A program made the translations under genes and the position numbers. 64,000 nt of DNA from Octopus sinensis (lineage: Eukaryota): assembly GCF_006345805.1 (NCBI RefSeq), contig NC_043002.1, forward strand, positions 13,702,001 to 13,766,000, in the 5' to 3' direction. This document shows, piece by piece, positions 24,027 through 54,173 of the stretch. Positions within the stretch are counted from its first letter, which is position 1. Each line of letters begins with the position of its first letter. The notes under the pieces were generated by a model. That model was given only the letters and a program-made list of their open reading frames with translations. It did not search any database and had not been told where the DNA came from.

Positions 24027-24057
<31 letters not shown>

Positions 24058-27910: not shown

Positions 27911-28088
27911 ACCACAGTTGTACTCCAGCATGATTGCAACCGCATGGTTGAATCGAGTAAAAGAATAAAACAATAAAGGAATATGCAAAACATGTATTAT
28001 ATATATATACATAGATACATACATACATATATATATGCGTATGTATATATATATATATATTATATATATATATACATATATATATGCG

Positions 28089-28124
<36 letters not shown>

Positions 28125-28211
28125 ATATAATGTGTGTATATATATTTATACTCGCACATATATATATACATTTATATATGTATAAATAAATATATATATG
28201 CTTATATATAT

Positions 28212-28679: not shown

Positions 28680-28890
28680 GTATTCTTGTTTCTTTATTGC
28701 CCACAAGGCATTAAACATAGAGGAGACAAACAAGTACATCAGCTCCAGTGCATAACTGATACTTAATTTATCGACCCCGAAAGGAAGAAAGACAAAGTCG
28801 ACCTCGGCGGAATTTGAACTCAGAACGTAACAGCAGACGAATTACCGCTAAGCATTTCGCCCGGCGCGCTAATATTTCTGCCAGCTCGTC
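28680..28890 (-). mobile_element. SINE copy
   Basis: Reverse complement of the family at 11958. Confidence 0.85.
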
Positions 28891-30244: not shown

Positions 30245-30960
30245 GTGCTGCGATAGAGATGAGTCAAGTAAAGCTAGCCAGAACAGAAGTCATATGGTCG
30301 CCCAGGGCTGAAATAATGAAGGCAATTCAAACTCAATCCAGTTATAAATACCTGGGAATACTCGAGGTAGATTGAATCAAACACTACGATATGAAGGAAA
30401 AGACAAAAATAAAATACCTGCCCGAGTGAGAAAAATATTGGCTTCAAAGCTGAATGCTATAAACATAATTTCGGCAATAAACTCGCCCACAGCTGCAGCA
30501 GTTCGGTATGGCGCTGGAATACTTAAGTGGACAGAGGAGAAGATAAAGGTGATGGACAGGAAGTCAAGAAAGCTCATAACGATGCATGATTCCCATCATC
30601 CACGTGCAGACACTGATACATAAAGAGAGCAAATGGAGGAAGAAGACTGATAAGTGTGAAAGACTGCATGCCTTTAGAACTCGATTGCTTAATATGATAC
30701 CTACCCAAAGTAAGGAAACCATGCTGGAGACAGTAAAGAACGATGGAGTATTGAGAGCAGAGGAGAAAAGGAAAAAACAAAGGAAGAAGTACAAAAAGGA
30801 CATAAAGAAGAAGTACGCAAGAAGGAACAACACAAACAATTCGATGTAGCCACAAAGAGGTTGTTGGTTGATGAATGAAACCCTAAAAAATAAAGAGAAA
30901 GAGAACCCTATACTGGCGGCGCAAGGCCAAGCTTTGGCCACGAATTGGAGGGTCAACCAT
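30244..30960 (+). mobile_element. Internal R4/Dong-clade fragment (RT thumb region), internally deleted
   Basis: YKYLGILE..KILASKLNAINIISAINS..YGAGILKWT..DRKSRKLITMH..HHPRADTD, ILAAQGQALAT. Confidence 0.8.
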
Positions 30961-32015
30961 AGGAACGAGCAAGGGCATTTTGTTTTTAGCCGATTATATC
31001 GATTCCGAGATAAATGGCAAATGCAAAGCGAAAATGAGATGAAGTCAGAATGTCAGAACGTGAAGAACTGTTGTAAGCATTGTGAAATTCCTCTATCAAG
31101 AGCTCAGCCGGTTTGAAATGCAAGAATCGTAGAACAAAAATCCTGACGATGTCTTTATTTGGTGAATAGGAATGAAAGAAATTTACAAATTTATAAACAC
31201 ACATAAGGCTATGTACAAAGTTTTACACGTATTGAATATAGGTCCTTATATCTATTTCATATTTAGTATAATAATAAAATTCCCTTGGCAAGACTTCATC
31301 TAGTTGTCTTAACTATGTAGCGAAGTGGGGATCAGGTTAAGCACATATTCCTCGAATAGGCTTCGTTCTCGACAGTTCAATCCTTACATCGGTTACTTTC
31401 TATTTCCCTTGATTTCTATGTTATCTTTGCTAATCTATGCCATTCTGCAATCCTCGTACTTATTTATGCACCCACTTATAAGAGCCCACTCGATCATCCT
31501 TTCATACACGATATACAGCTGCGTTAGATTACCATTTCCCGTTTTTTCCTAACTCTTTTTGCCAATATCGTTTCATGTGTCTTCTTTCCGTTCGTACAAC
31601 GACCCGTAAACCCTTGTATTTATGTAGGTGTGTGGTTTTACTGTTTTATTTTTTCCTTTTCTTCTATATGTACACACGCTTCCGTAACTATACATATACG
31701 TTTGATCACCTGCCTTTATACATACATATATACGTACATACATACATATATGCAAGCATGTATATACATACACACACACACACACACACTTAATTTGGAG
31801 GTTTCCAAAAAGCGATTTCTAATATTGATTCTTCAGATTTTGCTGGTGGTTTACAGGCGTAAATTTGCGAATATGAAAATAATACTTTTATATGATGTGC
31901 TGTGAATTTATCGAAAAAATACAATAGAATTCAACAATTTTGTTTAAAATGGGGAAGAGAAGATATTAAAATACATAAGAATACTTTGATTCATGCCGAC
32001 GATCGTTTCGTACAG
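30415..32015 (+). repeat. Duplicated block R, copy 1
   Basis: Colinear with 44135-45700, with scattered substitutions and indels. Confidence 0.95.
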
Positions 32016-34359
32016 ATATGCTTTCTTTTTTATACGGATATGCTTTCTACGCATACGTCTGTGTAGTCCTATTTTTGTGTGGACAAGCATATACATATGT
32101 GTGTATATATACGGTTCTTACATGCTTCAAATTTTGCCCCCTTACCCTTTATTATCTCTTCTTTGCCTTTCGCCCATAAGAGTTCTTTTTAATCACATAA
32201 TCTTTTAATTAATTATATCCCATTTTTTTGAGCCGGTTCCCTTCATTGAAGCCAGATGCAAGTTAATCACACCTTAGTTTGCAGTAGCTACACCATAAAT
32301 TTGCTAGCGAAATGAAACCACACCACTATCTATTTCGTTTAGGTAATCTGTGAGTAGGGAATTCCACTGGCCCTTTACCAGTTCCATTTTCCTCACCCTT
32401 ATTTCGTTTCTTAAATGTATGTCTCATTCCGAGGCCACCTTTATTTTGCGTTTTTCACTACGGCATATAATTTCAAGCTGAACTATCGAATGTATCTGGT
32501 GAAAAAGACACCCGACAGCCTTGAAGCATTCGTATGTAGAATTACTTTACTTGTACTTGTAGCGACATTCACCTCGGGCGGGTTGAGTCGGCTTCTTCTA
32601 CTCATGGAAGAAGTTTCGTGGGATTATGTAGATTTCACAAGCGGTCCCCAATAATCCCGCATGTGAAGACATCCTGTTTGCCGCAGATTGTCCGCAGACG
32701 CAGGGACACAACGACTGAGGAGCCGCCGGTTGCCGAAGAAGACACTCCGAGGATTTTTACCAGAGTCCCGTCTGCCGGGTTGTGGCCCTAATACCACTCG
32801 GTATCAGACCAATCGGCCTTGGGTGGCCCTACCAGGAACCGAAGTTCCCGATGGCATAGCTCTGACACTACCCGTTACCAGCGTTCCCCTCCCCACGGTG
32901 AGGAGGGGATGGACTTTGGAGACGTATGTAGAGTAATAGGTAACGCGTGTTTCTTTTGAATCAGTTCTAGTACTCGACTATTTCTTCCATTCTTTTTATT
33001 TTACAGAGATAATTATCTCATAATAGCAAAATTTGTTGATTTCGAACGGAAGATACATAGTTTACCAGCTTTTCCGAATTACATTTCTATTTTCGATATA
33101 GGAACGAAGTGCATTTCTTGCATTGATTAATAAACTCTGTTGATAAATTACCGATTCATCGGCGCTTTCTATACAAGCCTGGTCTATGCTACAGACTAAC
33201 CATCTAGAACTAACAAGAACAGGCTAACCATTCAGACAAACCATATCGAAGGGATTAATTCGAAGTTTCTGCTTGCTTGCCTTCACCAGACACTGAAAAT
33301 TCGAGTTCGGTTTCATAGTGGGGGGGGGGAGAAAGATGAACGAATAAATAAATGATTTAAAATAAATATATTGTAATTGCTGTGTGACAAAGTATATATA
33401 CTATGAGTATAAAATATAGTGTCTTTCAAAAACATCCTGAATTTGAACACTATATCTCGTGTTTAAGAAAAGACAAAACATTTTACATTTTATATTTTAT
33501 GAACATCGTCACTTACTCTCTCTCCCTCTCTCACTTTGTCTTTCCCGTGAAACTCTCTGCCTCTCTTCTTCCACTTTTCTTTATCTTGTTTTTCTTTTTG
33601 TTAGACGCCGTCAAAAAGATATGGCTGAAAATAGATTTTTACCGCTATCCGCGGGTGCCTCGGGAAAAAAATAAGTTGACAAAACCAAGATAGGATGTTT
33701 GCAAATGTCCTCCTAAAATTTGAGCGACATGCGTGCTAATTTGTGGATGTGCATGAACTACAATCACGTATACACACACACACATCTTGCCGTGTATATA
33801 TACAGATATATTTAAATATATATGTATTCCCAACCACAAGGTTCTGGGTTCAGTACTATTGCGTGACACCTTGGGCATTGTCTTCTGCTATAGACTCGAG
33901 CCGACCAAAGACTTGTGAGTATATCTGGTTGACGTAAACCGTAAGAAGCCCGTCTTATATATGTATATATATAATTATAGTATATTCTGTTAAGAACATA
34001 GTAGAATACAGTATAAAAGCTCACTCGTCCACTTTCACATTTAAACTTTACTTTCCAGTAGTAGTATTATATGTATTTCCAGGTTTGCATTTGGGCATCT
34101 CTCATGTGTGAATACATAATTGAAAAAATTGGAGTCAACAAGAAGAGTACGGTTGAACATTTATTTTTTAATCACTACAATTGTTTGCACGCAACGTAGT
34201 TCTCCAGATGTGCAGGTACTTGATTAAGAAACTATTTCCCTGCATTACGAGGTCTAGTTGTATTTCCTCAGGTGATATGTAAATATTGTCTCTGTAAATT
34301 TAAAATCCTCGGCTTCAAGAACATTCTATTTCTCTGTCGTGACCTTAATTTAGTAGTAG
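31840..34359 (+). repeat. Duplicated block U, copy 1
   Basis: Recurs at 36146-38280 (+), 39941-42468 (-) and, more diverged and partial, 46540-47782 (+). Confidence 0.95.
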
Positions 34360-36152
34360 GAAAATTTTCGGTGATAATTTTCGAAAAATTTTTGTTGAAA
34401 ATTTTCGGTGAAAATTTTCGAAAAATTCTTGTGGAAAATTTTCGAAAAACTTTTATTTAAAAATTTTCGGTGATAATTTTCCAAAAATTTTTGGTGATAA
34501 TTTTCCAAAAATTTTTGTTGAAAATTTTCCGTGAAAATTTTTGGGTAAAATTTTCGGTGATAATTTTCGAAAAATTTTTGTTGATAATTTTCGAAGAATT
34601 TTTGTGGAAAATTTTCGGTGAAAATTTTTGAAAAATTTTTGAGAAAAATTTTCGGTGATAATTTTCGAAAAATTCTTGAGAAAAATTTTCGGTGAAAATT
34701 TTCGAAAAATTCTTGAGGAAAATTTTCCAAAAATTTTTGGGTGAAATTTTCGGTGATAATTTTCGAAAAATTTTTGTTGAAAATTTTCGGTGAAAATTTT
34801 TGAAAAATTTTTGAGGATAATTTTCGGTGACAATTTTCGAAAAATTTTTGTTGAAAATTTTCGGTGAAAATTTTCGAAAAATTCTTGAGGAAAATTTTCG
34901 AAAAATGTTTGTGTAAAAATTTTCGATGATAATTTTCGAAAAATTTTTGTTGAAAATTTTCGAAAAATTTTCCAAAAATTTTGAAGTAATATTTTCGGTG
35001 ATAATTTTCCAAAAATTTTTGGTGCTAATTTTCGAAAAATTTTTGTTGAAAATTTTCGGTGAGGCATCTTGACTGTAGTAGTAAAGCAGTATTCACTCTA
35101 TATATACACAGAAATCAGCCACCTAAAAATCTATTTTTAGCCATAACAAATCTATTTTTAGCTCGGGGAAAATTTTCGAAAAATTCTTGAGGAATATTTT
35201 CCAAAAATTTTTGGTGTTAATTATCGAAAACTTTCGGTGATAATTTTCGCAAAATTTCTTGGTAAAATTTTCGGTGATAATTTAAAAAAAATTTTTGGTG
35301 ATAATTTTCGGTGAAAATTAAAAAAAAATTTTTGGTGATAATTTCCGATGATAATTTTCGAAAAATTGTTGTTGAAAATTTTCAAAAATTTTTTTGGTGA
35401 AATTTTCGGTGATAATTTTCGGAAAATTTTGGGTGATAATTTTCGAAAAATTTTTGTTGAAAATTTTCCGTGAAAATTTTTGGAAAATTTTGGGTAAAAT
35501 TTTCACCGAAAATTATCACCAAAAATTTTTTAAAAATTATCACCGAAAATTTTTAACAAAAATTTTTCGAAAATTATCACCAAAAATTTTTCGAAAATTT
35601 CACCCCAAAATTTTTTTCGAAAATTTTCCTCAACAATTTTTCGAAAATGTTCAATAAAAATTTTTCGAAAATTATCACCGAAAATTTTACCCAAAAATTT
35701 TTCGAAAATTTTCCCCGAGCTAAAAATAGATTTGTTATGGCTAAAAATAGATTTTTAGGTGGTTGATTTCTGTGTATATATAGAGTGAATACTGCTTTAC
35801 TACTACAGTCAAGATGCCTCACCGAAAATTTTCAACAAAAATTTTTCGAAAATTAGCACCAAAAGTTTTTGGAAAATTATCACCGAAAATATTACTTCAA
35901 AATTTTTGGAAAATTTTTCGAAAATTTTCAACAAAAATTTTTCGAAAATTATCATCGAAAATTTTTACACAAACATTTTTCGAAAATTTTCCTCAAGAAT
36001 TTTTCGAAAATTTTCACCGAAAATTTTCAACAAAAATTTTTCGAAAATTATCACCGAAAATTTCACCCAAATATTTTTGGAAAATTTTCCTCAAGAATTT
36101 TTCGAAAATTTTCACCGAAAATTTTTCTCAAGAATTTTTCGAAAAATTTTTG
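34360..36152. repeat. 37-bp dyad satellite arrays with two inverted cap modules (palindrome 1)
   Basis: Monomer GAAAATTTTCGGT-GATAATTTTC-GAAAAATTTTTGTT plus a 24-bp variant; caps at 35058-35168 (+) and 35712-35820 (-); strand switch near 35500. Confidence 0.95.
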
Positions 36153-38280
36153 TGAGCCGGTTTCCCTTCATTGAAGCCAGATGCATGTTAATCACACCTT
36201 AGTTTGCAGTAGCTACACCATAAATTTGCTAGCGAAATGAAACCACACCACTATCTATTTCGTTTAGGTAATCTGTGAGTAGGGAATTCCACTGGCCCTT
36301 TACCAGTTCCATTTTCCTCACCCTTATTTCGTTTCTTAAATGTATGTCTCATTCCGAGGCCACCTTTATTTTGGGTTTTTCACTACGGCATATAATTTCA
36401 AGCTGAACTATCGAATGTATCTTGTGAAAAAGACACCCGACAGCCTTGAAGCATTCGTATGTAGACTTACTTTACTTGTACTTGTAGCGACATTCACCTC
36501 GGGCGGGTTGAGTCGGCTTCTTCTACTCATGGAAGAAGTTTCGTGGGATTATGTAGATTTCACAAGCGGTCCCCAATAATCCCGCATGTGAAGACATCCT
36601 GTTTGCCGCAGATTGTCCGCAGACGCAGGGACACAACGACTGAGGAGCCGCCGGTTGCCGAAGAAGACACTCCGAGGATTTTTACCAGAGTCCCGTCTGC
36701 CGGGTTGTGGCCCTAATACCACTCGGTATCAGACCAATCGGCCTTGGGTGGCCCTACCAGGAACCGAAGTTCCCGATGGCATAGCTCTGACACTACCCGT
36801 TACCAGCGTTCCCCTCCCCACGGTGAGGAGGAGGGGATGGACTTTGGAGACGTATGTAGAGTAATAGGTAACGCGTGTTTCTTTTGAATCAGTTCTAGTA
36901 CTCGACTATTTCTTCCATTCTTTTATTTTACAGAGATAATTATCTCATAATAGCAAAATTTGTTGATTTCGAACGGAAGATACATAGTTTACCAGCTTTT
37001 CCGAATTACATTTCTATTTTCGATATAGGAACGAAGTGCATTTCTTGCATTGATTAATAAACTCTGTTGATAAATTACCGATTCATCGGCGCTTTCTATA
37101 CAAGCCTGGTCTATGCTACAGACTAACCATCTAGAACTAACAAGAACAGGCTAACCATTCAGACAAACCATATCGAAGGGATTAATTCGAAGTTTCTGCT
37201 TGCTTGCCTTCACCAGACACTGAAAATTCGAGTTCGGTTTCATGGGGGGGGGGGGAGAAAGATGAACGAATAAATAAATGATTTAAAATAAATATATTGT
37301 AATTGCTGTGTGACAAAGTATATATACTATGAGTATAAAATATAGTGTCTTTCAAAAACATCCTGAATTTGAACACTATATCTCGTGTTTAAGAAAAGAC
37401 AAAACATTTTACATTTTATATTTTATGAACATCGTCACTTACTCTCTCTCCCTCTCTCACTTTGTCTTTCCCGTGAAACTCTCGGTCTCTTCTTCCACTT
37501 TTCTTTATCTTGTTTTTCTTTTTGTTAGACGCCGTCAAAAAGATATGGCTGAAAATAGATTTTTACCGCTATCCGCGGGTGCCTCGGGAAAAAAATAAGT
37601 TGACAAAACCAAGATAGGATGTTTGCAAATGTCCTCCTAAAATTTGAGCGACATGCGTGCTAATTTGTGGATGTGCATGAACTACAATCACGTATACACA
37701 CACACACATCTTGCCGTGTATATATACAGATATATTTAAATATATATGTATTCCCAACCACAAGGTTCTGGGTTCAGTACTATTGCGTGACACCTTGGGC
37801 ATGTGTCTTCTGCTATAGACTCGAGCCGACCAAAGACTTGTGAGTATATCTGGTTGACGTAAACCGTAAGAAGCCCGTCTTATATATGTATATATATAAT
37901 TATAGTATATTCTGTTAAGAACATAGTAGAATACAGTATAAAGCTCACTCGTCCACTTTCACATTTAAACTTTACTTTCCAGTAGTAGTATTATATGTAT
38001 TTCCAGGTTTGCATTTGGGCATCTCTCATGTGTGAATACATAATTGAAAAAATTGGAGTCAACAAGAAGAGTACGGTTGAACATTTATTTTTTAATCACT
38101 ACAATTGTTTGCACGCAACGTAGTTCTCCAGATGTGCAGGTACTTGATTAAGAAACTATTTCCCTGCATTACGAGGTCTAGTTGTATTTCCTCAGGTGAT
38201 ATGTAAATATTGTCTCTGTAAATTTAAAATCCTCGGCTTCAAGAACATTCTTTCTCTGTCGTGACCTTAATTTAGTAGTA
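36146..38280 (+). repeat. Duplicated block U, copy 2
   Basis: Near-identical to 32222-34359. Confidence 0.95.
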
Positions 38281-39940
38281 GGAAAATTTTCGGTGATAAT
38301 TTTCGAAAAATTTTTGTTGAAAATTTTCGGTGAAAATTTTCGAAAAATTCTTGTGGAAAATTTTCGAAAAACTTTTATTTAAAAATTTTCGGTGATAATT
38401 TTCGAAAAATTTTTGTTGAAAATTTTCGGTGTGAAAATTTTTGGGTAAAATTTTCGGTGATAATTTTCGAAAAATTTTTGTTGATAATTTTCGAAGAATT
38501 TTTGTTGAAAATTTTCGGTGAAAATTTTTGAAAAATTTTTGAGAAAAATTTTCGGTGATAATTTTCGAAAAAATTTTCAGAGAAAAATTTTCGGTGATGA
38601 AATTTTCGAAAAATTCTTGAGGAAAATTTTCCAAAAATTTTTGGGTGAAATTTTCGGTGATAATTTTCGAAAAATTTTTGTTGAAAATTTTTGGTGAAAA
38701 TTTTTGAAAAATTTTTGAGGATAATTTTCGGTGAACATTTTCGAAAAATTTTTGTTGAAAATTTTCGGTGAAAATTTTCGAAAAATTCTGAGGAAAATTT
38801 TCGAAAAATGTTTGTGTAAAAATTTTCGATGATAATTTTCGAAAAATTTTTGTTGAAAATTTTCGAAAAATTTCCAAAAATTTTGAAGTAATATTTTCGG
38901 TGATAATTTTCCAAAAATTTTTGGTGCTAATTTTCGAAAAATTTTTGTTGAAAATTTTCGGTGAGGCATCTTGACTGTAGTAGTAAAGCAGTATTCACTC
39001 TATATATACACAGAAATCAGCCACCTAAAAATCTATTTTAGCCATAACAAATCTATTTTTAGCTCGGGGAAAATTTTCGAAAAATTCTTGAGGAATATTT
39101 TCCAAAAATTTTTGTGTGTTAATTATCGAAAACTTTCGGTGATAATTTTCGAAAATTTTCCCCGAGCTAAAAATAGATTTGTTATGGCTAAAAATAGATT
39201 TTTAGGTGGCTGATTTCTGTGTATATATAGAGTGAATACTGCTTTACTACTACAGTCAAGATGCCTCACCGAAAATTTTCAACAAAAATTTTTCGAAAAT
39301 TAGCACCAAAAATTTTTGGAAAATTATCACCGAAAATATTACTTCAAAATTTTTGGAAAATTTTTCGAAAATTTTCAACAAAAATTTTTCGAAAATTATC
39401 ATCGAAAATTTTTACAAACATTTTTCGAAAATTTTCCTCAAGAATTTTTCGAAAATTTTCACCGAAAATTTTCAACAAAAATTTTTCGAAAATTGTTACC
39501 GAAAATATCCTCAAAAATTTTTCAAAAATTTTCACCGAAAATTTTCAGCAAAAATTTTTCGAAAATTATCACCGAAAATTTCACCAAAAATTTTTGGAAA
39601 ATTTTCCTCAAGAATTTTTCGAAAATTTTCACCGAAAATTTTTCTCAAGAATTTTTCGAAAATTATCACCGAAAATTTTTCTCAAAAATTTTTCAAAAAT
39701 TTTCACCGAAAATTTTCCACAAAAATTCTTCGAAAATTATCAACAAAAATTTTTCGAAAATTATCACCGAAAATTTTACCCAAAAATTTTCACCGAAAAT
39801 TTTCAACAAAAATTTTTCGAAAATTATCACCGAAAATTTTTAAATAAAAGTTTTTCGAAAATTTTCCACAAGAATTTTTCGAAAATTTTCACCGAAAATT
39901 TTCAACAAAAATTTTTCGAAAATTATCACCGAAAATTTTC
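38281..39940. repeat. 37-bp satellite arrays with inverted caps (centre of palindrome 2)
   Basis: Array 38281-38960 is mirrored by 39269-39940; caps 38960-39070 (+) and 39159-39268 (-) flank a ~90-bp satellite spacer. Confidence 0.95.
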
Positions 39941-42468
39941 CTACTACTAAATTAAGGTCACGACAGAGAAATAGAATGTTCTTGAAGCCGAGGATTTTAA
40001 ATTTACAGAGACAATATTTACATATCACCTGAGGAAATACAACTAGACCTCGTAATGCAGGGAAATAGTTTCTTAATCAAGTACCTGCACATCTGGAGAA
40101 CTACGTTGCGTGCAAACAATTGTAGTGATTAAAAAATAAATGTTCAACCGTACTCTTCTTGTTGACTCCAATTTTTTCAATTATGTATTCACACATGAGA
40201 GATGCCCAAATGCAAACCTGGAAATACATATAATACTACTACTGGAAAGTAAAGTTTAAATGTGAAAGTGGACGAGTGAGCTTTATACTGTATTCTACTA
40301 TGTTCTTAACAGAATATACTATAATTATATATATACATATATAAGACGGGCTTCTTACGGTTTACGTCAACCAGATATACTCACAAGTCTTTGGTCGGCT
40401 CGAGTCTATAGCAGAAGACACATGCCCAAGGTGTCACGCAATAGTACTGAACCCAGAACCTTGTGGTTGGGAATACATATATATTAAATATATCTGTATA
40501 TATACACGGCAAGATGTGTGTGTGTGTATACGTGATTGTAGTTCATGCACATCCACAAATTAGCACGCATGTCGCTCAAATTTTAGGAGGACATTTGCAA
40601 ACATCCTATCTTGGTTTTGTCAACTTATTTTTTTCCCGAGGCACCCGCGGATAGCGGTAAAAATCTATTTTCAGCCATATCTTTTTGACGGCGTCTAACA
40701 AAAAGAAAAACAAGATAAAGAAAAGTGGAAGAAGAGAGGCAGAGAGTTTCACGGGAAAGACAAAGTGAGAGAGGGAGAGAGAGTAAGTGACGATGTTCAT
40801 AAAATATAAAATGTAAAATGTTTTGTCTTTTCTTAAACACGAGATATAGTGTTCAAATTCAGGATGTTTTTGAAAGACACTATATTTTATACTCATAGTA
40901 TATATACTTTGTCACACAGCAATTACAATATATTTATTTTAAATCATTTATTTATTCGTTCATCTTCTCCCCCCCCCCTATGAAACCGAACTCGAATTTT
41001 CAGTGTCTGGTGAAGGCAAGCAAGCAGAAACTTCGAATTAATCCCTTCGATATGGTTTGTCTGAATGGTTAGCCTGTTCTTGTTAGTTCTAGATGGTTAG
41101 TCTGTAGCATAGACCAGGCTTGTATAGAAAGCGCCGATGAATCGGTAATTTATCAACAGAGTTTATTAATCAATGCAAGAAATGCACTTCGTTCCTATAT
41201 CGAAAATAGAAATGTAATTCGGAAAAGCTGGTAAACTATGTATCTTCCGTTCGAAATCAACAAATTTTGCTATTATGAGATAATTATCTCTGTAAAATAA
41301 AAAGAATGGAAGAAATAGTCGAGTACTAGAACTGATTCAAAAGAAACACGCGTTACCTATTACTCTACATACGTCTCCAAAGTCCATCCCTCCTCACCGT
41401 GGGGAGGGGAACGCTGGTAACGGGTAGTGTCAGAGCTATGCCATCGGGAACTTCGGTTCCTGGTAGGGCCACCCAAGGCCGATTGGTCTGATACCGAGTG
41501 GTATTAGGGCCACAACCCGGCAGACGGGACTCTGGTAAAAATCCTCGGAGTGTCTTCTTCGGCAACCGGCGGCTCTCTCAGTCGTTGTGTCCCTGCGTCT
41601 GCGGACAATCTGCGGCAAACAGGATGTCTTCACATGCGGGATTATTGGGGACCGCTTGTGAAATCTACATAATCCCACGAAACTTCTTCCATGAGTAGAA
41701 GAAGCCGACTCAACCCGCCCGAGGTGAATGTCGCTACAAGTACAAGTAAAGTAATTCTACATACGAATGCTTCAAGGCTGTCGGGTGTCTTTTTCACCAG
41801 ATACATTCGATAGTTCAGCTTGAAATTATATGCCGTAGGAAAAACGCAAAATAAAGGTGGCCTCGGAATGAGACATACATTAAGAAAACGAAATAAGGGT
41901 GAGGAAAATGGAACTGGTAAAGGGCCAGTGGAATTCCCTACTCACAGATTACCTAAACGAAATAGATAGTGGTGTGGTTTCATTTCGCTAGCAAATTTAT
42001 GGTGTAGCTACTGCAAACTAAGGTGTGATTAACTTGCATCTGGCTTCAATGAAGGGAAACCGGCTCACAAAAATGGGATATTAATTAATTAAGAAAGATT
42101 ATGTGATTAAAAATAACTCTTAGGGGCGAAAGGCAAAGAAGAGATAATAAAGGGTAAGGGGGCAAAATTTGAAGCATGTAAGAACCGTATATATACACAC
42201 ATATGTATATGCTTGTCCACACAAAAATAGGACTACACAGACGTATGCGTAGAAAGCATATCCGTAATAAAAAGAAAGCATATCTGTACGAAACGATCGT
42301 CGGCATGAATCAAAGTATTCTTATGTATTTTAAATCTTCTCTTCCCCATTTTAAACAAAATTGTTGAATTCTATTGTATTTTTTCGATAATTCACAGCAC
42401 ATCATATAAAAGTATTATTTTCATATTCGCAAATTTACGCCTGTAAACCACCAGCAAAATCTGAAGAA
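39941..42468 (-). repeat. Duplicated block U, copy 3 (inverted)
   Basis: Reverse complement of 31840-34359. Confidence 0.95.
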
Positions 42469-42493
42469 TCTGCGGACAATCTGCGGCAAACAG

Positions 42494-44125
42494 AAAAATT
42501 TTGGGTAAAATTTCCGGTGATAATTTTCGAAAAATTTTTGTTGAAAATTTTCGGTGAAAATTTTCGAAAAATTCTTGAGGAACATTTTCAACAAATTTTC
42601 AACAAATTTTCAAAAATTTTTAAGTAAAATTTTTAACAAATTTTTGGAAAATTCTTGAGGAATATTTTCGAAAATTTTTGGTGTTAATTATCGAAAAATT
42701 TTTGTTCATAATTTTCGGTGAAAATTTTTGAAAAATTCTTGAGGAAAATTTTCGAAAAATTTTTGTTGAAAATTTTCGGTGAAAATTTTTCAAAAATTTT
42801 TAAGGAAAATTTTCGGTGATAATTTTCGAAAAATTTTTCTTGAAAATTTTGGGGTGAAATTTTCGAAAAATTTTTGGTGATAATTTTCGAAAAATTTTTG
42901 TTGAAAATTTTCGGTGAAAATTTTTGAAAAATTTTTGGTGATAATTTTCCAAAAATTTTTGTTGAAAATTTTCGGTGAAAATTTTCGGTGATAATTTTCC
43001 AAAAATTTTTGGTGATAATTTTCGAAAAATTTTTGTTGAAAATTTTCGGTGAGGCATCTTGACTGTAGTAGTAAAGCAGTATTCACTCTATATATACACA
43101 GAAATCAGCCACCTAAAAATCAAGTTTTAGCCATAACAAATCTATTTTTAGCTCGGGGAAAATTTTCGAAAAATTCTTGAGGAATATTTTCGAAAAATTT
43201 TTGGTGTTAATTATCGAAAAATTTTTATTGATAATTTTCGGTGATAATTTTCGCAAAATTTTTTTTGAAAATTTTCGGTGATAATTTTCGCAAAATTTTT
43301 GTTGAAAATTATCGTGGAAAGTTTTCGAAAAATTCTTGAGGAAAATTTTCGGTGATAATTTTCCAAAAATTTTTGGTGATAATTTTCGGGGAAAATTTTC
43401 AAAAAATTCCTGAGGAAAATTTTCGAAAAATTTTTTGGTAAAATTTTCGGTGATAATTTTTGAAAAATTTTTGGTGATAATGTTCGGTGAAAATTTTTCA
43501 AAAATTTTTTTTGAAAATTTTCGATGACAATTTCGAAAAATTGTTGTTGAAAATTTTCGAAAAATTTTTTGGTAAAATTTTCGGTGATTATTTTCCAAAA
43601 AGTTTTGGTGATAATTTTCGAAATTTTTGTTGAAAATTTTCGTGGAAAATTTTCGAAAAATTCTTGAGGAAAATTTTCGGTGATAATTTTTGAAGAATTT
43701 TTGGTGATAATTTTTCTGTGAAAACTTTCGAAAAATTAACTAATATGCTCCATATGCTGAAGTCTATAAACGTCGACAGCAGAATCTGGTGAGGCATCTT
43801 GACTGTAGTAGTAAAGCACTCTATATATACACGGAAAGCAGCCAACTAAAAATCTATTTTTAGCCATAACAAATCTATTTTCGGTGAAAATTTTTGGAAA
43901 ATTTTTGGATAAAATTTTCGGTGCTAATTTTCAAAAAAGGTTTGTTGAAAATTTTTGGGTAAAATTTTCGGTGATAATTTTCGAAAAATTTTTGTTGAAA
44001 ATTTTCCTTTGGTAAAATTTTCGGTGATAATTTTCGAAAAATGTTTGCTGATAAATTTGGGTGAAGATTTTCCAAAAAATTTTGGGTAAAATTATGGGTG
44101 AAAAGTTTCGGAAAATTTTTAGGTA
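42494..44125. repeat. 37-bp satellite arrays with two same-orientation cap modules
   Basis: Caps at 43048-43158 and 43788-43880; the latter is preceded by ~50 bp of non-satellite sequence. Confidence 0.95.
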
Positions 44126-44134
44126 AAAAAGTGT

Positions 44135-45700
44135 ATACCTGCCCGAATGAGAAAAATATTGGCTTCAAAGCTGAATGCTATAAACATAATTTCGGCAATA
44201 AACTCACCCACAGTTGCAGCAGTTCGGTATGGCGCTGGAATACTTAAGTGGACAGAGGAGAAGATAAAGGTGATGGACAGGAAGTCAAGAAAGCTCATAA
44301 CGATGCATGATTCCCATCATCCACGTGCAGACACTGATACATAAAGAGAGCAAATGGAGGAAGAAGACTGATAAGTGTGAAAGACTGCATGCCTTTAGAA
44401 CTCGATTGCTTAATATGATACCTACCCAAAGTAAGGAAACCATGCTGGAGACAGTAAAGAACGATGGAGTATTGAGAGCAGAGGAGAAAAGGAAAAACAA
44501 AAGAAGTACAAAAAGGACATAAAGAAGAAGTACGCAAGAAGGAACTACACAAACAATTCGATGTAGCCACAAAGAGGTTGTTGGTTGATGAATGAAACCC
44601 TAAAAAATAAAGAGAAAGAGAACCCTATACTGGCGGCGCAAGGCCAAGCTTTGGCCACGAACTGGAGGGTTAACCTTAGGAACGAGCAAGTGCATTTTGT
44701 TTTTAGTCGATTATATCGATTCCGAGGCCAATGGCAAATGCAAAGCGAAAATGAGATGAAGTCAGAATGTCAGAACGTGAAGAACTGTTGTAAGCATTGT
44801 GAAATTCCTCTATCAAGAGCTCAGCCGGTTTGAAATGCAAGAATCGTAGAACAAAAATCCTGATGATGTCTTTATTTGGTGAATAGGAATGAGAAAAACA
44901 ACTTACAAACTTATAAACACACATAAGGCTATGTACAAAGTTTTACATGTATTGAATATAGGTCCTTATATCTATTTCATATTTAGTATAATAATAAAAT
45001 TCCCTTGGCAAGACTTCATCTAGTTGTCTTAACTATGTAGCGAAGTGGGGATCAGGTTAAGCACATATTCCTCGAATAGGCTTCGTTCTCGACAGTTCAA
45101 TCCTTACATCGGTTACTTTCTATTTCCCTTGATTTCTATGTTATATCTTGCTAATCTATGCCATTCTGCAATCCTCGTACTTATTTATGCACCCACTTAT
45201 AAGAGCCCACTCGATCATCCTTTCATACACGATATACAGTTGCGTTAAATTACCATTTCCCGTTTTTTCCTAACTCTTTTTGCCAATATCGTTTCATGTG
45301 TCTTCTTTCCGTTCGTACAACGACCCGTAAACCCTTGTATTTATGTAGGTGTGTGGTTTTACTGTTTTATTTTTTCCTTTTCTTCTATATGTACGCACGC
45401 TTTCGTAACTATACATATAAGTTTGTTCACCTGCCTCTTTTATACATACATATATACGTACATACACACACACATTTAATTTGGAGGTCTCCAAAAAACG
45501 ATTTCTAATATTGATTCTTCAGATTTTGCTGGTGGTTTACAGGCGTAAATTTGCGAATATGAAAATAATACATTTATATGATGTGCTGTGAATTTATCGA
45601 AAAAAATACAATAAGATTCAACAATTTTTTTAAAATGGAGAAGAGAAGATATTAAAATACATAAGAAAATTTTGATTCATGCCGACGATCGTTTCGTACA
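44135..45700 (+). repeat. Duplicated block R, copy 2 (includes the R4/Dong fragment)
   Basis: Colinear with 30415-32015. Confidence 0.95.
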
Positions 45701-46243
45701 GAGATATAAAAATCATGCAAATTCATGGTTGAATTGAATTAAATTATATTAATTAAATTCAATATATGCCAATTTACTCATCAGTGCAAGAAGTACAAAC
45801 AAAATTTTCAAAATGACCTAGCAGATTCATATTTATTCTTATGAGAAAAAGAGATGTGAGTCTAGTTAGATTAATTTAATTGTTGAGTTTTGTGGGATTT
45901 CTTTCAATAAATTCACAAGACGTCACAGACAAGTGTATGTAAATATATATATATATACATATATATTTACATACATATATATGTACATATATATATATGT
46001 GTGTGTATATATATATACACACACTCACACGTACACACACATATATATATATATATAGCTATATATACATATATCTATATCTATATATATACATATATAT
46101 ACTTAGATACATATATATATACATGCACACACGCACGCATATATGACAAATTAAACGTGCGGCTTATTAGTAATTATAACCTAAAAGCATAATTAATGGA
46201 GCTCGTATATTAATGTGAACTCTGTTAATTTTCCCTATATATG

Positions 46244-46277
<34 letters not shown>

Positions 46278-46381
46278 TATATAGTTAATCCAAACAAGAA
46301 AACACAAAAAAACACAACAACGCGAGGACGTGGAACAAATATAGTATTATTGAACGCTCAGAAAAGAAGGGAAGAAGGAGG

Positions 46382-46416
46382 GTTTAACGTTTCGAGCGGA
46401 GCTCTTCGTCGGAAAC
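46382..46416 (-). ncRNA. Degenerate minimal hammerhead motif in a Penelope-like terminal repeat fragment (about 46280-46500)
   Basis: GUUU-CCGACGA-A-GAGC-UCC-GCUC-GAAA-C-GUU-AAAC: stems I and II pair, palindromic AACGUU stem III; core has U4C and an extra A. Confidence 0.55.
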
Positions 46417-46539
46417 ATAGGAGAAGGAAAGATCCAGAAAAGGGAAGACAGAGGAAAAAAATCGCCAACGGTACACACGAGGTCACATTTTGAATAGGTA
46501 TGCCTTTATATTTCTATATATTTTAAATGCGTGTATAAT

Positions 46540-47782
46540 TATGTTTTGATACGGACATGCTTTATACGCGTACGTCTGTGTAGTCCTATTTTTGTGTGGA
46601 CGAGCATATTCCTATGTGTGTATTTATACGGTTCTTATATGCTTCAAATTTTGCCCCTTTCTCTTTTTTATCTCTTCCTTGCCTTTCACCCCTAAGAGTT
46701 CTTTTTAGTCACATAATCTTTCTTAATTAATAAATATCCCATTTTTTTGAGCCGGTTTCCCTTCATTGAAGCCAGATGGAAATTACTCACACCTTAGTTT
46801 GCAGGAGCCACACCATCTATAAATTTGAGTATGCAGCTAGCGAAATGAAACCACACCGCTATCTATTTCGTTTAGGTAATCTGTGAATAATACCAGTTCC
46901 ACATTCCTCACCCTTAGTTTCATACTTAAATGTATGTCTCATTCCGAGGCCACCTTTATTTTTCATTTTTCACCACGGCATATAATTTCAAGCTGAACTA
47001 TCGAATGTATCTGGTGAAAAAGACACCCGACAGCCTTGAAGCATTTGTATGTAGACTTACTTTACTTGTACTTGTGGCGACATTCACCTCGGGCGGGTTG
47101 AGTCGGCTTCTTCTACTCATGGAAGAAGTTTCGTGGGAATATGTGGATTTCACAAGCGGTCCCCAATAATCCCGCATGTGAAGACATCCTGTTTGCCGCA
47201 GATTGTCCGCAGACGCAGGGACAGAACGACCGAGAAGCCGCCGGTTGCCGAAGGTAGACACTCCAAGGATGTTTGGCCCTAATACCACTCGGTGTCAGAC
47301 CAATCCGTCTTGGGTGACCCTACCAGGAACCGAAGTTCCCGACGGCATAGCTCTGACACTACCCGTTACCAGCATCCCCACCACGGCGAGGAGGGGATGG
47401 ACTTTTGGAACGTATGTAGAGTAATAGGTAACGCGTGTTTCTTTTGAACCAGTTCTAGTACTCGACTATTTTGTTCCATTCTTATTATTTTACAAAGATT
47501 ATTATCTCATGATAGTAACATTTGTTGATTTCGAACTGAAGATGCACACTTTACCAGCTTTTCCGAATTTCATTTCTATTTTCAATATAAGAACGAGGTG
47601 CATTTCATTCATTGATTAATAAACTCTGTTGATAAATTACCGATTCCTTGGCACTTTCTATACAAGCCTGGTTTATGCTACAGACTAACCATCTAGAACT
47701 AACAAGAACAGGCTAACCATTCAGACAAACCATATCGAAGGGTTTAATTCGAAGTTTCTGCTTGCTCGACTTCACCAGACAC
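46540..47782 (+). repeat. Duplicated block U, copy 4 (older, partial)
   Basis: Visibly more diverged from 32030-33292; truncated at the palindrome at 47784. Confidence 0.95.
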
Positions 47783-47813
47783 AGTTAAAAGGCTATATAT
47801 ATATATATATATA

Positions 47814-47983
47814 TAGCCTTTTAACCTACAAATTTAACACTGCGACACAGCATTATATATCTTTCTATCTCTCTATCTCTCTATCTCTCTTATATTCTCA
47901 ATCTCTCGACCTCTCTTTCCCTCTATTTCTCTTTCTTTCTCACTCTCTCCCTCCCTGTCTCTCTGCATATCTAGTACGATATG

Positions 47984-48076
<93 letters not shown>

Positions 48077-48079
48077 TGC

Positions 48080-48152
<73 letters not shown>

Positions 48153-49680
48153 AAGAGTGGAAAGGAACACACGAGTTGACATATATGAAAAAACAAGTCA
48201 AAAATAGGAAATGCTAAGATAATTTTATAGTGAATCTTTCAGTACCGGTTTCGGTCATTTTGAGACCTTTTCAACTGTAACGATTAAATAATTAAATTTA
48301 GAAAAATTAGAAGAAAAGTTTTTTAAAAGAATATTTCTGTAGTAGTGTTCAGATATAAGTAGCATTCTGCCTTTCTCTGACTCCCTTGTTTGCACTTGTG
48401 TGTTCGAGGTCGTTTTGAGTTCTTGGTAGGATAGGTGAAGAATAATAAGGCTGATGTAAAGAGGGGGGGGGGGAAATCTGGGAATACCTTAATGGTCGTA
48501 TTTTGAATGGTCAGTGGCTGACAGTAGTCGCAGTTCAATTCAGGAATTGTTTATGGAATTTGCGTAGGCGTTATACTGAAAGACATTAGTGACAAGGTTA
48601 AGGGGTGGAAGGTGAAGTAGAAGAAGAAGAAGATGACGATGTTGATGATGATGATGATGAAGAAGAAGAAGAAGGAGAAGGAGAAGATGGTGGTGATGAT
48701 GGTGGTGATGATGATGACGACGATGATGATGATAATGATGATGATGAAGAAGAAGAGGAAGGAGAAGAAGAAGAAAAAAACAGAGAAGGGAGAATATGAA
48801 TGGGTGTAAGTGATGGGGCTGATTAGTAATGGATTCTATGGAGTGTAATATTTGTGTGTGTATATATTTCTTTTATTCTAAAGTTGAGGTATATTAATTG
48901 TTTGTCGTAGACCCGTTAAGAAGTGGCTTGTATTTTGTAATAAAGAGATTTTCTTTACTTATTCGTTGTCTCGAGGTTGTATCGTCCCTAAATTGGTAGA
49001 GGGGGAAAATTCTGAAGTTTGGTGTTTTTTTGTTGGCGCAAGTATCTATGTGTTGGCTAAAAGCTATTTTTCTGTTTTAGGGAATTTTTATCTGGGATCT
49101 GTGCTGGGCCATTCGTTTACGCAAACCATTTTTTGTTTGGCCTATGTACTGCTCTTGACACCCGGAGTAGGTTAGTGAGTATATTAGGTTCTCCGAAGCA
49201 CATGTGAAGTTGCTTTTCACTGTAAACCGTTGTCCCTATTTGAAGGAGAACTCTGATCCCTCAATTAGATAGTCGCATATCCCGCAATTGGGTCTTCCAC
49301 ATTTTTTTACTGTCGGCTTCTGTGTTGAAGAGTGAATTCGGGCTTGTGTAAGGAGACTTTTCATGGATCTAGGCTGTCTTTTGCTTTTTATGATCGTGTG
49401 TGTTTGGAGGATTGTGTTCATTCTGTGGTCTTTTTTTAGGAGGGGTATGTTGTGGAGGATGGTGTCGAAGGCTTCGTTATTGAGAGGGTTGTGTGTGGAG
49501 ATGTATGGTAAGGCTTTTGGTTGTAAGTTTTTCTTTGATTTGGGATGTCTCAGTTCCTTGATGTTAAGTTGAAGGGCACGTTGAATGCACTTGTCAATAA
49601 GTGAAGGTGGATAGTTCCTGGTGATAAGGGTATCTTTTAGTTCTTGTAGTCGTGTGTCTCTGATGTTTGCGTTAGAGACT
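47814..49680 (-). mobile_element. Inverted copy of the 3' end of the Penelope-like element plus its downstream flank
   Basis: Reverse complement of 52646-54472 with several substitutions and indels. Confidence 0.95.
48240..48277 (-). ncRNA. Minimal hammerhead motif, U3-A8 core (inverted repeat copy)
   Basis: CAG-UUGAAAA-GGUC-UCAAAAU-GACC-GAAA-CCG-GUA-CUG. Confidence 0.7.

Positions 49681-54125: not shown

Positions 54126-54173
<48 letters not shown>

What the first reader, a model, noticed from the sequence alone, without database searches (positions are those of the whole stretch)
34360..42468. Two large palindromes centred on the satellite: candidate satellite-driven fold-back amplification system
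Seen: palindrome 1 (about 34730-36150) and palindrome 2 (36146-42075, ~2.9-kb arms, ~90-bp spacer) both turn around inside satellite between inverted caps. The centre of palindrome 2 looks like that of palindrome 1 with the middle deleted. Monomer order in the outer arrays is mirrored, whereas the two inner arrays of palindrome 1 are not mirror copies. Inference: the self-complementary array lets a replicating or broken strand fold back and copy flanking DNA, giving inverted then tandem duplication. This is the strongest candidate for an undescribed system here, but palindromic read artefacts can mimic it.
Basis: partly seen in the sequence, partly recalled or inferred. Interest (0 to 1): 0.75.

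Follow-up and report, generated by a model that had tools for sequence, protein, structure and literature searches.

The report
Nested palindromic duplication around AT-rich satellite
In non-coding, transposon-rich DNA of an octopus-type genome, about 3 kb of ordinary sequence is present three times (twice forward, once inverted), with every rearrangement joint touching a hairpin-prone AT-rich satellite: a clear example of a known way of making inverted duplications, not a new system.

Summary
Both palindromes are in the sequence at the stated coordinates, both turn around in the satellite between inverted 106-nt "caps", and the centre of palindrome 2 is the centre of palindrome 1 minus 455 bp.

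- A third copy of the arm (A1, 31827-34359) forms a larger palindrome with the right arm, which runs on to 42470.
- The arms of palindrome 1 are as young (99%) as those of palindrome 2.
- The distal joint carries a 23-nt insertion copied from 870 bp away.

The arms hold only LINE and SINE debris and no genes. The host is an octopod, judged from retroelement homology.

The most economical history has four steps:
- A fold-back inverted duplication of about 3.4 kb seeded in the self-complementary satellite.
- A 3.9-kb tandem duplication across its centre.
- A deletion in the second centre.
- Small monomer-sized indels.

This matches known fold-back and template-switching rearrangements, so it is a new member of a known kind.

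An assembly artefact is not excluded (about 20%). The copies differ mainly by 1-nt indels, which look like consensus errors, and no reads were available. However, the centres are asymmetric, the structure is internal to the window, and no adapter remnants are present. Whether this satellite does the same at other loci could not be tested.

The parts
30414..31746 (+). X1: LINE-derived flank. It is the start of an older direct segmental duplication, repeated at X2.
   Evidence: 97.3% identical to 44135-45470. The translation shows retroelement-like ORF debris that continues upstream of 30414 (the LINE call rests on my own knowledge).
31827..34359 (+). A1: non-coding arm, copy 1, in the ancestral context. 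It is contiguous with X1 in the same way that A4 is with X2.
   Evidence: Inverted to 42470-39943 at 98.3% including satellite. Substitution identity to A3' is 99.72%. 31761-32016 matches 45447-45702 at 93.8% across the 31827 breakpoint.
34360..35062 (+). Sa1: outer satellite array, forward. Sub-repeats are 12-13 nt with AAAATTTT cores, and the main periods are 24 and 37 nt.
   Evidence: Tandem Repeats Finder periods 13/24/37/61/74, orientation markers, alignment to Sa2 and Sa3'.
35063..35168 (+). cap1: 106-nt non-satellite block inside the array.
   Evidence: Exact 19-20-mers mark six copies of the cap; sequence.
35169..35712 (.). Centre of palindrome 1. The inner arrays meet head to head at about 35503/35504 on an AAAATTTT core, and they are not mirror copies of each other.
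   Evidence: The orientation track flips at 35500. Mirror alignment is 88%, which equals the satellite background. Folding z = -12.6.
35713..35818 (-). cap1': inverted cap.
35819..36145 (-). Sa1': inverted outer array. It is truncated at the equivalent of about 34662 and carries a 74-bp (2 x 37) deletion.
   Evidence: 95/96 and 355/359 identical to the reverse complement of Sa1 and cap1.
36143..36150 (.). J2: tandem-duplication junction. Inverted satellite joins arm position 32222, with at most 1-3 nt of microhomology.
   Evidence: Junction compared with both parental sequences.
36146..38281 (+). A2: arm copy 2. It starts at the equivalent of 32222.
   Evidence: 99.35% substitution identity to A1 and 99.16% to A3'.
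38282..38964 (+). Sa2: outer satellite array, forward.
38965..39069 (+). cap2.
39070..39159 (.). Centre of palindrome 2: a 90-nt asymmetric spacer, made of the first ~76 nt of the forward inner array (35169-35243) plus the last 14 nt of the inverted one (35699-35712). It equals the centre of palindrome 1 minus 35244-35698.
   Evidence: Alignment blocks 203/203 and 141/142 identical, with TTTTCG at both deletion edges. Folding z = -38.
39160..39265 (-). cap2': inverted cap.
39266..39941 (-). Sa3': inverted outer array, full length.
39942..42470 (-). A3': inverted arm. It reaches the equivalent of 31827, further than A2 does.
42471..42493 (+). J3: 23-nt templated insertion, an exact same-strand copy of 41600-41622, which lies 870 bp back in A3'. 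There are 2 nt (TC) of microhomology on the entry side.
   Evidence: Exact 23-mer found at 41600 and 42471, and its reverse complement in A1, A2 and A4. Junction context.
42494..44129 (+). S4: one-orientation satellite block, laid out as Sa4, cap4 (43053-43158), Sb4, a unique 54 nt, a partial cap (43793-43872) and Sc. It is an older paralogue of S1, about 81-85% identical in the arrays and about 98% in the cap.
44130..44135 (.). J4: junction of the older tandem duplication, where the end of the satellite joins the equivalent of X position 30414.
44135..47782 (+). X2-A4: older direct copy of X1-A1 (97% falling to 94% and then 89%). It has an 842-bp insertion at 45702-46544 and ends at the equivalent of 33293.

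Best explanation
This is a very young, nested segmental duplication of gene-free DNA. It was produced by DNA replication or repair errors at a hairpin-prone, AT-rich satellite. It is a mutational by-product, not an encoded system.

**Proposed history**

1. **Starting state (inferred).** X-A-satellite, with caps inside the array and a small native orientation switch near 35503.
2. **Inverted duplication (inferred from anatomy).** A broken or stalled 3' end inside the satellite paired with an inverted copy of the repeat just inside cap1. It then copied back through cap, Sa and A for about 3.4 kb. This made a palindrome with a spacer of about 500 nt: A Sa cap | spacer | cap' Sa' A'.
3. **Return to the original template (junction shown, process inferred).** At the equivalent of 31827 the copying end switched 870 nt back, copied 23 nt, and re-entered the original template in satellite at 42494.
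4. **Tandem duplication (structure shown, order inferred).** A 3.9-kb duplication ran from arm position 32222, across the centre, to inverted-satellite position ~34662. It created J2 and a second centre.
5. **Centre deletion (shown).** The second centre lost 455 bp between two TTTTCG motifs, the kind of central deletion that stabilises long palindromes.
6. **Small indels (shown).** Monomer-sized indels of 24 and 74 bp followed in the arrays.

Steps 2 to 4 could equally be one multi-switch replication event.
For: **Three copies.** The three arm copies are 99.2-99.7% identical at substitutions over 2.1 kb. The satellite arms are about 99% identical apart from whole-monomer indels.

**Junctions in satellite.** Every junction has a side in satellite.

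**Hairpin potential.** The satellite folds on itself far better than shuffles: z = -7.4 in one orientation and -12.6 at the turn. Its inverted self-matches are 71-78% complementary over about 300 nt.

**Order of events.** Centre 2 is centre 1 minus 455 bp, with 100% identical flanks and a 6-nt microhomology. The tandem step therefore copied an existing palindrome centre.

**J3 scar.** J3 carries an exact 23-nt templated insertion from 870 bp away, with 2-nt microhomology.

**Not an element end.** The outer breakpoint at 31827 lies inside sequence that is continuous in the older paralogue X2-A4, so it is a breakpoint and not the terminus of a mobile element.

**Against a read-through chimera.** Both centres are asymmetric with real spacers, there are no Ns, no PacBio or ONT adapter remnants were found, and 20-30 kb of unique flank lies on each side.

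**Match to described cases.** Human fold-back inverted duplications show the same anatomy: a single-copy spacer of 766 bp to 70 kb, short inverted homology at the spacer edge, and insertions at some junctions (PMC3907307).
Against: - No read-level evidence was available.
- Differences among the three young copies are about 1:1 indel to substitution with few transitions. Older paralogues in the same window show about 1:9 and an excess of transitions. Most of the differences therefore look like consensus errors. That fits a very recent event, but it fits an assembler over-copying one repeat equally well.
- The inner arrays of palindrome 1 are not mirrored. The model needs either a pre-existing orientation switch or rapid array turnover.
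- Shared variants do not resolve the order of copying. Site 32228 groups A2 with A3', site 32541 groups A1 with A3', and A2 has the most private changes.
- Without an unrearranged allele, the inverted microhomology used for the fold-back cannot be read.
- Only one locus was seen.
Confidence: 0.58

Rival explanations
1. Assembly or sequencing artefact. The genome would hold fewer copies, for example one arm or one simple palindrome. Chimeric long reads or a wrong path through near-identical repeats would have produced the extra copies and joints.
For: - The copies are near-identical, and their differences have the spectrum of consensus errors: indels as common as substitutions and a low share of transitions, unlike older paralogues in the window.
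- AT-rich hairpin-forming repeats are hard to sequence and assemble (own knowledge).
- No reads could be examined.
Against: - Template-complement or missed-adapter chimeras turn around exactly, with no spacer, at fragment ends. Here the centres have about 500-nt and 90-nt asymmetric spacers.
- The structure is internal to the window with long unique flanks and no Ns.
- J3 has a 23-nt templated insertion, and the copies differ by discrete 24-, 74- and 455-bp indels. A repeat-path error would not create these.
- A multi-pass SMRTbell model fails because the last reverse segment runs 395 bp beyond the supposed insert end at 32222.
Confidence: 0.2
2. Homology-driven origin. Inverted cap-satellite arrays already existed at the locus as an old inverted repeat. 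Template switching or recombination between them, as in DUP-TRP/INV-DUP events, copied A in inverted orientation. No de novo fold-back at microhomology would be needed.
For: - The head-to-head inner arrays are only 88% alike, as expected if they are an old spacer or old inverted repeat.
- S4 also holds short patches of reversed monomers around 42580-42640, so orientation switches are native to this satellite.
Against: - High mirror identity starts only 22 nt inside the cap and covers cap plus Sa at 99%. Any old right-hand repeat must have been almost completely overwritten.
- The order of the copies (forward, forward, inverted) is not the forward-inverted-forward order of DUP-TRP/INV-DUP.
Confidence: 0.14
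3. Foldback-type transposable element. The inverted satellite arrays, or the whole 10.6-kb palindrome, would be the long terminal inverted repeats of a mobile element.
For: Foldback elements such as FB, Galileo and Tetris have long inverted termini built of tandem sub-repeats (own knowledge). Palindrome 1 resembles that superficially.
Against: - The outer ends are not element termini. 31827 lies inside sequence that is continuous in the X2-A4 paralogue.
- The right end is a templated-insertion joint, and the right arm of palindrome 1 is simply truncated at J2.
- There is no target-site duplication and no transposase ORF.
- The same satellite also occurs as a plain direct array, S4.
Confidence: 0.03
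4. A selected, functional palindrome: a hairpin-RNA or small-RNA locus, or a dedicated amplification system, maintained by arm-to-arm gene conversion.
For: The 2.9-kb arms with a 90-nt loop would give a near-perfect hairpin if transcribed. The arms contain transposon fragments.
Against: - There are no genes and no Rfam families.
- No expression data were available.
- The near-identity of the arms is explained simply by youth.
- The junction scars point to an accident of replication.
Confidence: 0.05

Closest known systems
Fold-back inverted duplications with a single-copy spacer (Hermetz et al. 2014, PMC3907307; earlier yeast, Tetrahymena and CHO work by Butler, Rattray and Tanaka, cited from my own knowledge)
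   Same: - Inverted arms are separated by a non-duplicated spacer (about 500 nt here; 766 bp to 70 kb in patients).
- The turn lies where inverted homology is available.
- Microhomology or inserted sequence is present at the other junction.
   Different: - This case is interstitial, with a return to the same chromosome, not a terminal deletion with telomere or translocation capture.
- It is kilobase scale rather than megabase scale.
- It is seeded in a tandem satellite rather than in dispersed repeats or 2-8-bp microhomology.
- It was followed by a tandem duplication.
[quoted passage not shown]
   Same: It is replication-based, with template switching between strands at short interrupted inverted repeats. 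It yields extra inverted copies in place with no loss of sequence.
   Different: - ODIRA predicts forward-inverted-forward with fold-back junctions at both ends. Here the order is forward, forward, inverted.
- Only the centres are fold-back junctions; J2 and J3 are not.
- The presence of an origin is unknown.
MMBIR/FoSTeS complex rearrangements and DUP-TRP/INV-DUP (Lee 2007, Hastings 2009, Carvalho 2011; own knowledge)
   Same: Several switches occur within a few kb, junction microhomology is 0-3 nt, and there is a short templated insertion from nearby (23 nt from 870 bp away).
   Different: - The copy order differs from DUP-TRP/INV-DUP.
- A single-event origin is not shown. The deletion-derived second centre favours at least two steps.
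Palindromic AT-rich repeats (PATRRs) of human 11q23, 22q11 and 17q11 (Kurahashi, Emanuel; own knowledge)
   Same: Both are AT-rich (GC about 26% here) and capable of forming hairpins or cruciforms, and both sit at rearrangement breakpoints.
   Different: - PATRRs are single near-perfect palindromes that break at their centre and give translocations.
- This is a tandem array of 12-13-nt units with 8-12-nt palindromic cores, and the outcome is a local inverted plus tandem duplication.
Stabilising central deletions of long palindromes ('centre-break'; Akgun 1997, Cunningham 2003; own knowledge)
   Same: The second centre has lost 455 bp at the axis of symmetry between 6-nt microhomologies, which leaves an asymmetric spacer.
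   Different: This is inferred from one sequence and was not observed as a process.
Foldback transposons (FB, Galileo, Tetris; own knowledge)
   Same: Both have inverted arrays of short tandem repeats facing each other.
   Different: There are no element termini, target-site duplications or transposase. The arm boundary is a breakpoint inside otherwise continuous DNA.

Membership tests
Fold-back inverted duplication | Two copies of a segment lie in inverted orientation next to each other. | tested here: met
   31827-35190 against 42470-39138 at 98.3%; 36146-39069 against 42074-39160 at 98%.
Fold-back inverted duplication | A single-copy spacer (the fold-back loop) lies between the arms. | tested here: met
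   About 500 nt (35191-35690) in centre 1, and 90 nt cap-to-cap in centre 2. Neither spacer is mirrored.
Fold-back inverted duplication | Pre-existing short inverted homology lies at the spacer/arm boundary. | tested here: inconclusive
   The satellite offers abundant inverted homology. The bases actually used cannot be read without an unrearranged allele.
Fold-back inverted duplication | A distal terminal deletion healed by a telomere, translocation or ring (the classical human form). | tested here: not met
   The right arm rejoins local sequence (S4, X2) through a 23-nt templated insertion.
ODIRA inverted triplication | The copy order is forward-inverted-forward. | tested here: not met
   The order is A1 forward, A2 forward, A3' inverted.
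ODIRA inverted triplication | Both novel junctions sit at short interrupted inverted repeats. | tested here: not met
   The centres qualify. J2 and J3 join non-mirrored positions.
ODIRA inverted triplication | A replication origin lies inside the amplified segment. | not testable with these tools
   No origin data exist for this organism.
MMBIR/FoSTeS-type rearrangement | Microhomology of a few nt at the junctions. | tested here: met
   At most 1-3 nt at J2, 2 nt (TC) at J3, and 6 nt (TTTTCG) at the centre deletion.
MMBIR/FoSTeS-type rearrangement | Short templated insertions copied from nearby sequence. | tested here: met
   42471-42493 is an exact copy of 41600-41622 on the same strand.
MMBIR/FoSTeS-type rearrangement | All junctions were made in one replicative event. 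| tested here: inconclusive
   The copy tree is star-like, which is compatible with one event. The deletion-derived second centre suggests at least two steps.
Foldback transposon | Defined termini flanked by target-site duplications. | tested here: not met
   The breakpoint at 31827 lies inside sequence that is continuous in X2-A4. J2 and J3 are not termini.
Foldback transposon | Dispersed multiple copies in the genome. | not testable with these tools
   The host genome is not in any searchable collection. The satellite and cap are absent from the metagenome and viral collections.
PATRR-like cruciform hotspot | An AT-rich sequence able to form a long hairpin or cruciform. | tested here: met
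   GC is 0.26 in the satellite windows. Folding z-scores are -7.4, -12.6 and -38.
PATRR-like cruciform hotspot | Recurrent breakage at the palindrome centre in independent events or individuals. | not testable with these tools
   Only a single assembled locus is available.
Palindromic read or assembly artefact | An exact turn with no spacer, and/or an adapter remnant at the turn. | tested here: not met
   The spacers are asymmetric, and there is no adapter match within 3 mismatches.
Palindromic read or assembly artefact | No spanning reads, or abnormal read depth. | not testable with these tools
   No read data were available.

The most novel reading that the evidence does not exclude
This AAAATTTT-core satellite, with its cap blocks, could be a recurrent, genome-wide fragile site in octopods. 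It would repeatedly seed palindromic and tandem segmental duplications, as a tandem-array analogue of human PATRRs. In doing so it could create long perfect hairpin loci from transposon-bearing DNA that may feed small-RNA pathways.
Probability: 0.12. Interest if true: 0.6.

Novelty: new member of a known kind. Interest (0 to 1): 0.3.

Why it matters
If real, this is a well-preserved, very young natural example of several things together: a hairpin-prone AT-rich satellite nucleating an inverted duplication, secondary tandem duplication of a palindrome, and stabilisation of that palindrome by a central deletion. All the junction scars are still legible, and it comes from a cephalopod genome, a lineage known for heavy repeat content and rearrangement.

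It gives concrete, PCR-testable junctions at 36146 and 42471-42493. It also gives a simple genome-wide test: do arrays of this satellite sit at orientation switches more often than expected?

It does not reveal a new kind of biological system. Its practical value is as a case study and as a flag for checking the assembly.

Tried and rejected
1. **The satellite as a coding sequence.** ORFs of 160-229 aa lie on the CACC strand in all three frames. They exist only because that strand has no TA or TG dinucleotides. A search of 5.8 billion proteins found only two unrelated low-complexity hits.
2. **Other loci with this satellite.** Two satellite patterns in metagenome contigs and the cap in viral contigs all gave zero matches. 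A literature search for the motif found only unrelated uses, and a search for octopus satellite DNA found nothing relevant. The host genome is not in the protein collection either: there were no self-hits.
3. **RNA genes.** No Rfam family and no tRNA was found in the window.
4. **Sequencing adapters at the turns.** None were found.
5. **A missed-adapter multi-pass read model.** Rejected because the last reverse segment passes the supposed insert end and the centres are not exact.
6. **ODIRA and DUP-TRP/INV-DUP as exact models.** Rejected on copy order.
7. **Foldback transposon.** Rejected on termini.
8. **Ordering the events from shared variants.** There are too few sites and they conflict.
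9. **Mirror relationship of the inner arrays.** A rare variant, AATTGTTG, sits at mirrored distances from the turn, 135 and 132 nt. Overall similarity is no better than background, so this stays unresolved.
10. **Pfam on the neighbouring retroelement ORFs.** No hits. Homologues did identify the retroelement.


Full report
**What the window is**

The 64-kb window is eukaryotic and full of microsatellites. It has no Rfam or tRNA hits and no convincing host gene.

A degenerate Penelope-like retroelement lies at 49985-52883. Its closest named relatives are in Octopus vulgaris, O. bimaculoides and Argonauta hians, at 57-67% identity. The matched proteins carry RVT_1, GIY-YIG and PF26215. The host is therefore an octopod; the species is not determined.

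**Anatomy of the locus**

Reading left to right:

- X1 (30414-31746), LINE-derived debris.
- A1 (31761-34359), non-coding, with a SINE-like piece.
- Sa1 (34360-35062), satellite, forward.
- cap1 (35063-35168).
- Inner forward array (35169-35503).
- Inner reverse array (35504-35712).
- cap1' (35713-35818).
- Sa1' (35819-36145), reverse. It is truncated at the equivalent of ~34662.
- J2.
- A2 (36146-38281), which starts at the equivalent of 32222.
- Sa2 (38282-38964).
- cap2 (38965-39069).
- A 90-nt spacer (39070-39159).
- cap2' (39160-39265).
- Sa3' (39266-39941).
- A3' (39942-42470), which reaches the equivalent of 31827.
- A 23-nt insertion (42471-42493).
- S4 (42494-44129), one orientation, with its own cap and a partial cap.
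- J4.
- X2 (44135-45470).
- A4 (45447-45702 and 46544-47782).

The satellite is confined to this locus: 206 of the 216 AAAATTTT cores in the window lie in these blocks.

**Check of the observation**

- Palindrome 2 is 98% self-complementary over 5.9 kb.
- Palindrome 1 looked weaker, at 84-92%. That is only because its right arm has a 74-bp (2 x 37) deletion. Otherwise its arms are 450/455 identical.
- Centre 2 equals centre 1 minus 35244-35698. The flanks match 203/203 and 141/142, and TTTTCG sits at both edges.
- The outer arrays are mirrored monomer for monomer.
- The inner arrays of palindrome 1 are 88% alike in mirror register. That equals their similarity to unrelated parts of the satellite.

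What was missed:

- A1 is a third copy, and with A3' it forms a larger palindrome (31827-35190 against 42470-39138, 98.3%).
- An older direct duplication, X1-A1 against X2-A4, shows that X-A is one continuous ancestral sequence.

**Age and quality of the copies**

Over the 2.1 kb of non-satellite arm, the three copies are 99.2-99.7% identical at substitutions.

Their differences are unusual. Indel events are as frequent as substitutions, and transitions are in the minority:

| Pair | Transitions | Transversions | Indel events |
|---|---|---|---|
| A1-A2 | 1 | 5 | 8 |
| A1-A3' | 5 | 6 | 12 |

Older paralogues in the same window behave like ordinary divergence:

| Pair | Transitions | Transversions | Indel events |
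|---|---|---|---|
| X1-X2 | 22 | 6 | 3 |
| A1-A4 | 49 | 38 | 10 |
| Retroelement arms | 40 | 22 | 8 |

Much of the 0.3-0.8% difference is therefore probably consensus error, and the real copies may be almost identical. That fits either a very recent event or an assembly problem.

The few informative sites conflict: 32228 groups A2 with A3', and 32541 groups A1 with A3'. The tree is effectively a star.

**Junctions**

- **J2.** Inverted satellite is joined to arm position 32222 with at most 1-3 nt of overlap.
- **J3.** The inverted arm stops at the equivalent of 31827. An exact 23-nt copy of 41600-41622 follows (same strand, 870 bp back, 2-nt TC microhomology on entry), and then satellite S4 begins.
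- **J4.** The end of S4 is joined to X at the equivalent of 30414. In X1 the retroelement-like reading frames continue upstream of that point (the LINE assignment is my own knowledge), so X2 is the truncated, derived copy.

All five joints (two turns, J2, J3, J4) have at least one side in satellite.

**Properties of the satellite**

- Units of 12-13 nt are grouped in 24- and 37-nt periods, and GC is about 0.26.
- The units are built around AAAATTTT and TTTTCGAAAA palindromic cores.
- Orientation is readable only from the GGTG/CACC punctuation.
- Arrays match their own reverse complement at 71-78% over about 300 nt.
- As single-stranded DNA, a one-orientation stretch folds 26 kcal/mol better than shuffles (z = -7.4). 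The head-to-head turn has z = -12.6 and the centre of palindrome 2 has z = -38.
- Removing a cap restores the satellite periodicity (...CGGTGA|AAAATTTTCG...). The caps therefore look like blocks embedded in the array.
- Caps are about 98% alike even between S1 and S4, whose arrays are only about 81-85% alike.

**Most likely history**

The outer right arm (A3') extends further than A2 and mirrors the A/Sa boundary exactly. A2-Sa2-cap2 carries the first ~76 nt of the forward inner array, which the right arm does not contain. The simplest reconstruction is:

1. An inverted duplication of about 3.4 kb forms a palindrome: A Sa cap | ~500-nt spacer | cap' Sa' A'. It is seeded by intrastrand pairing or strand switching in the satellite. 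It is closed by two further switches, the 23-nt insertion and then re-entry into the satellite.
2. A 3.9-kb tandem duplication runs from 32222, across the centre, to the inverted array. This creates J2 and a second centre.
3. A 455-bp deletion occurs at the axis of the second centre.
4. Small monomer-sized indels follow.

Steps 1 and 2 may have been one multi-switch replication event; the star-like tree allows it.

The non-mirrored inner arrays imply that an orientation switch already existed in the array. S4 also has short reversed patches at about 42580-42640.

**Comparison with what is known**

- The anatomy is that of fold-back inverted duplications: arms, a single-copy spacer, a turn where inverted homology is available, and microhomology or an insertion at the far junction. 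In patients the spacers are 766 bp to 70 kb, the inverted microhomology is 2-8 bp or about 300 bp of repeat, and five of 21 junctions carry insertions (PMC3907307).
- It shares the replicative strand-switch logic of ODIRA (PMC4689423, PMC10766183, PMC10766186). It fails ODIRA's forward-inverted-forward order and its two fold-back junctions.
- The microhomologies and the templated insertion fit MMBIR/FoSTeS (own knowledge).
- The AT-rich hairpin-prone seed recalls human PATRRs, and the central deletion recalls stabilising 'centre-break' events in long palindromes (own knowledge).
- A foldback transposon is excluded, because the arm boundary lies inside sequence that is continuous in the paralogue and there are no termini, target-site duplications or transposase.

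**Artefact question**

Evidence against an artefact:
- The spacers are asymmetric rather than exact turns.
- The structure is internal, with long unique flanks and no Ns.
- There are discrete structural differences between the copies.
- J3 has a templated insertion.
- No adapter remnants were found.
- A multi-pass read model does not fit.

Evidence for an artefact:
- The differences between copies have an error-like spectrum.
- This kind of sequence is difficult to sequence and assemble.
- No read data were available.

I put about 20% on the structure, or its copy number, being wrong.

**Verdict**

- The claim of an undescribed system is not supported. This is a gene-free, very young, nested inverted-plus-tandem segmental duplication of a known mechanistic kind.
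- Whether the satellite is a recurrent hotspot could not be tested, because neither the host genome nor any relative carrying the satellite is reachable.

Interest 0.3. Novelty: new member of a known kind.

Noticed in passing
window 47814-54472: A second, unrelated inverted structure. The arms 47814-49680 and 54472-52646 are 94.9% identical and lie around a 3-kb spacer that carries degenerate Penelope-like retroelement ORFs (49985-52883). The left arm is an inverted copy of the element's 3' half. The homologues carry RVT_1, GIY-YIG and PF26215 and are closest to octopod proteins. Inverted partial copies are typical of Penelope-like elements (own knowledge).
   Followed up: partly
window 30414-33293 vs 44135-47782: The older direct duplication X1-A1 / X2-A4 shows an identity gradient along its length: 97.3%, then 93.8%, then 88.9%. 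The second copy has an 842-bp insertion (45702-46544), and homology ends abruptly at 47782, where the retroelement palindrome begins. The gradient is unexplained; partial gene conversion or two layers of duplication are possible.
   Followed up: partly
window 35063-35168, 38965-39069, 43053-43158, 43793-43872 (and inverted copies): The 106-nt 'cap' blocks inside the satellite are about 98% alike even between arrays that are only about 81-85% alike. Removing a cap restores the satellite period. The spacing of 740 nt between the two caps in S4 suggests a loose higher-order unit, or a small insertion that targets the array. The second cap in S4 is preceded by 54 nt of unique sequence (43738-43791).
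   Followed up: partly
window 34350-35067, 38272-38969, 39261-39950, 43113-43598: The satellite is open in all three reading frames on the CACC strand (ORFs of 160-229 aa), because that strand lacks TA and TG dinucleotides. Gene finders may call these spurious ORFs as proteins.
   Followed up: yes
window 54711-55374; also 11953-12185, 19022-19191, 28745-28887: A 184-nt unit is repeated 3.6 times in tandem at 92% identity, and dispersed single copies occur elsewhere in the window at 84-95%. This looks like a SINE-like element forming a short tandem array. From memory it resembles a common octopus SINE.
   Followed up: no
window 13529-13759 / 14658-14888 and 24056-24274 / 24823-24602: A 231-nt direct repeat pair at 98.7% identity lies 1.1 kb apart and looks LTR-like. 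A 220-nt inverted pair at 96.9% identity lies about 330 nt apart and looks like the terminal inverted repeats of a small DNA transposon.
   Followed up: no
window 7031-7381, 9495-10045, 10513-10809, 22343-22844, 27998-28213: Microsatellite tracts here are exceptionally long and frequent: (TAA)n up to 183 units, (ATCT)n, (ATGT)n of 126 units, and (TA)n. The window 8001-10000 has a GC skew of -0.49, driven by (CAT)n and (TCC)n tracts.
   Followed up: no
window 47782-47830 and 54460-54475: The outer ends of the retroelement palindrome sit in a small perfect hairpin, GTTAAAAGGCTA(TA)nTAGCCTTTTAAC. Its half-site recurs at 54464.
   Followed up: no
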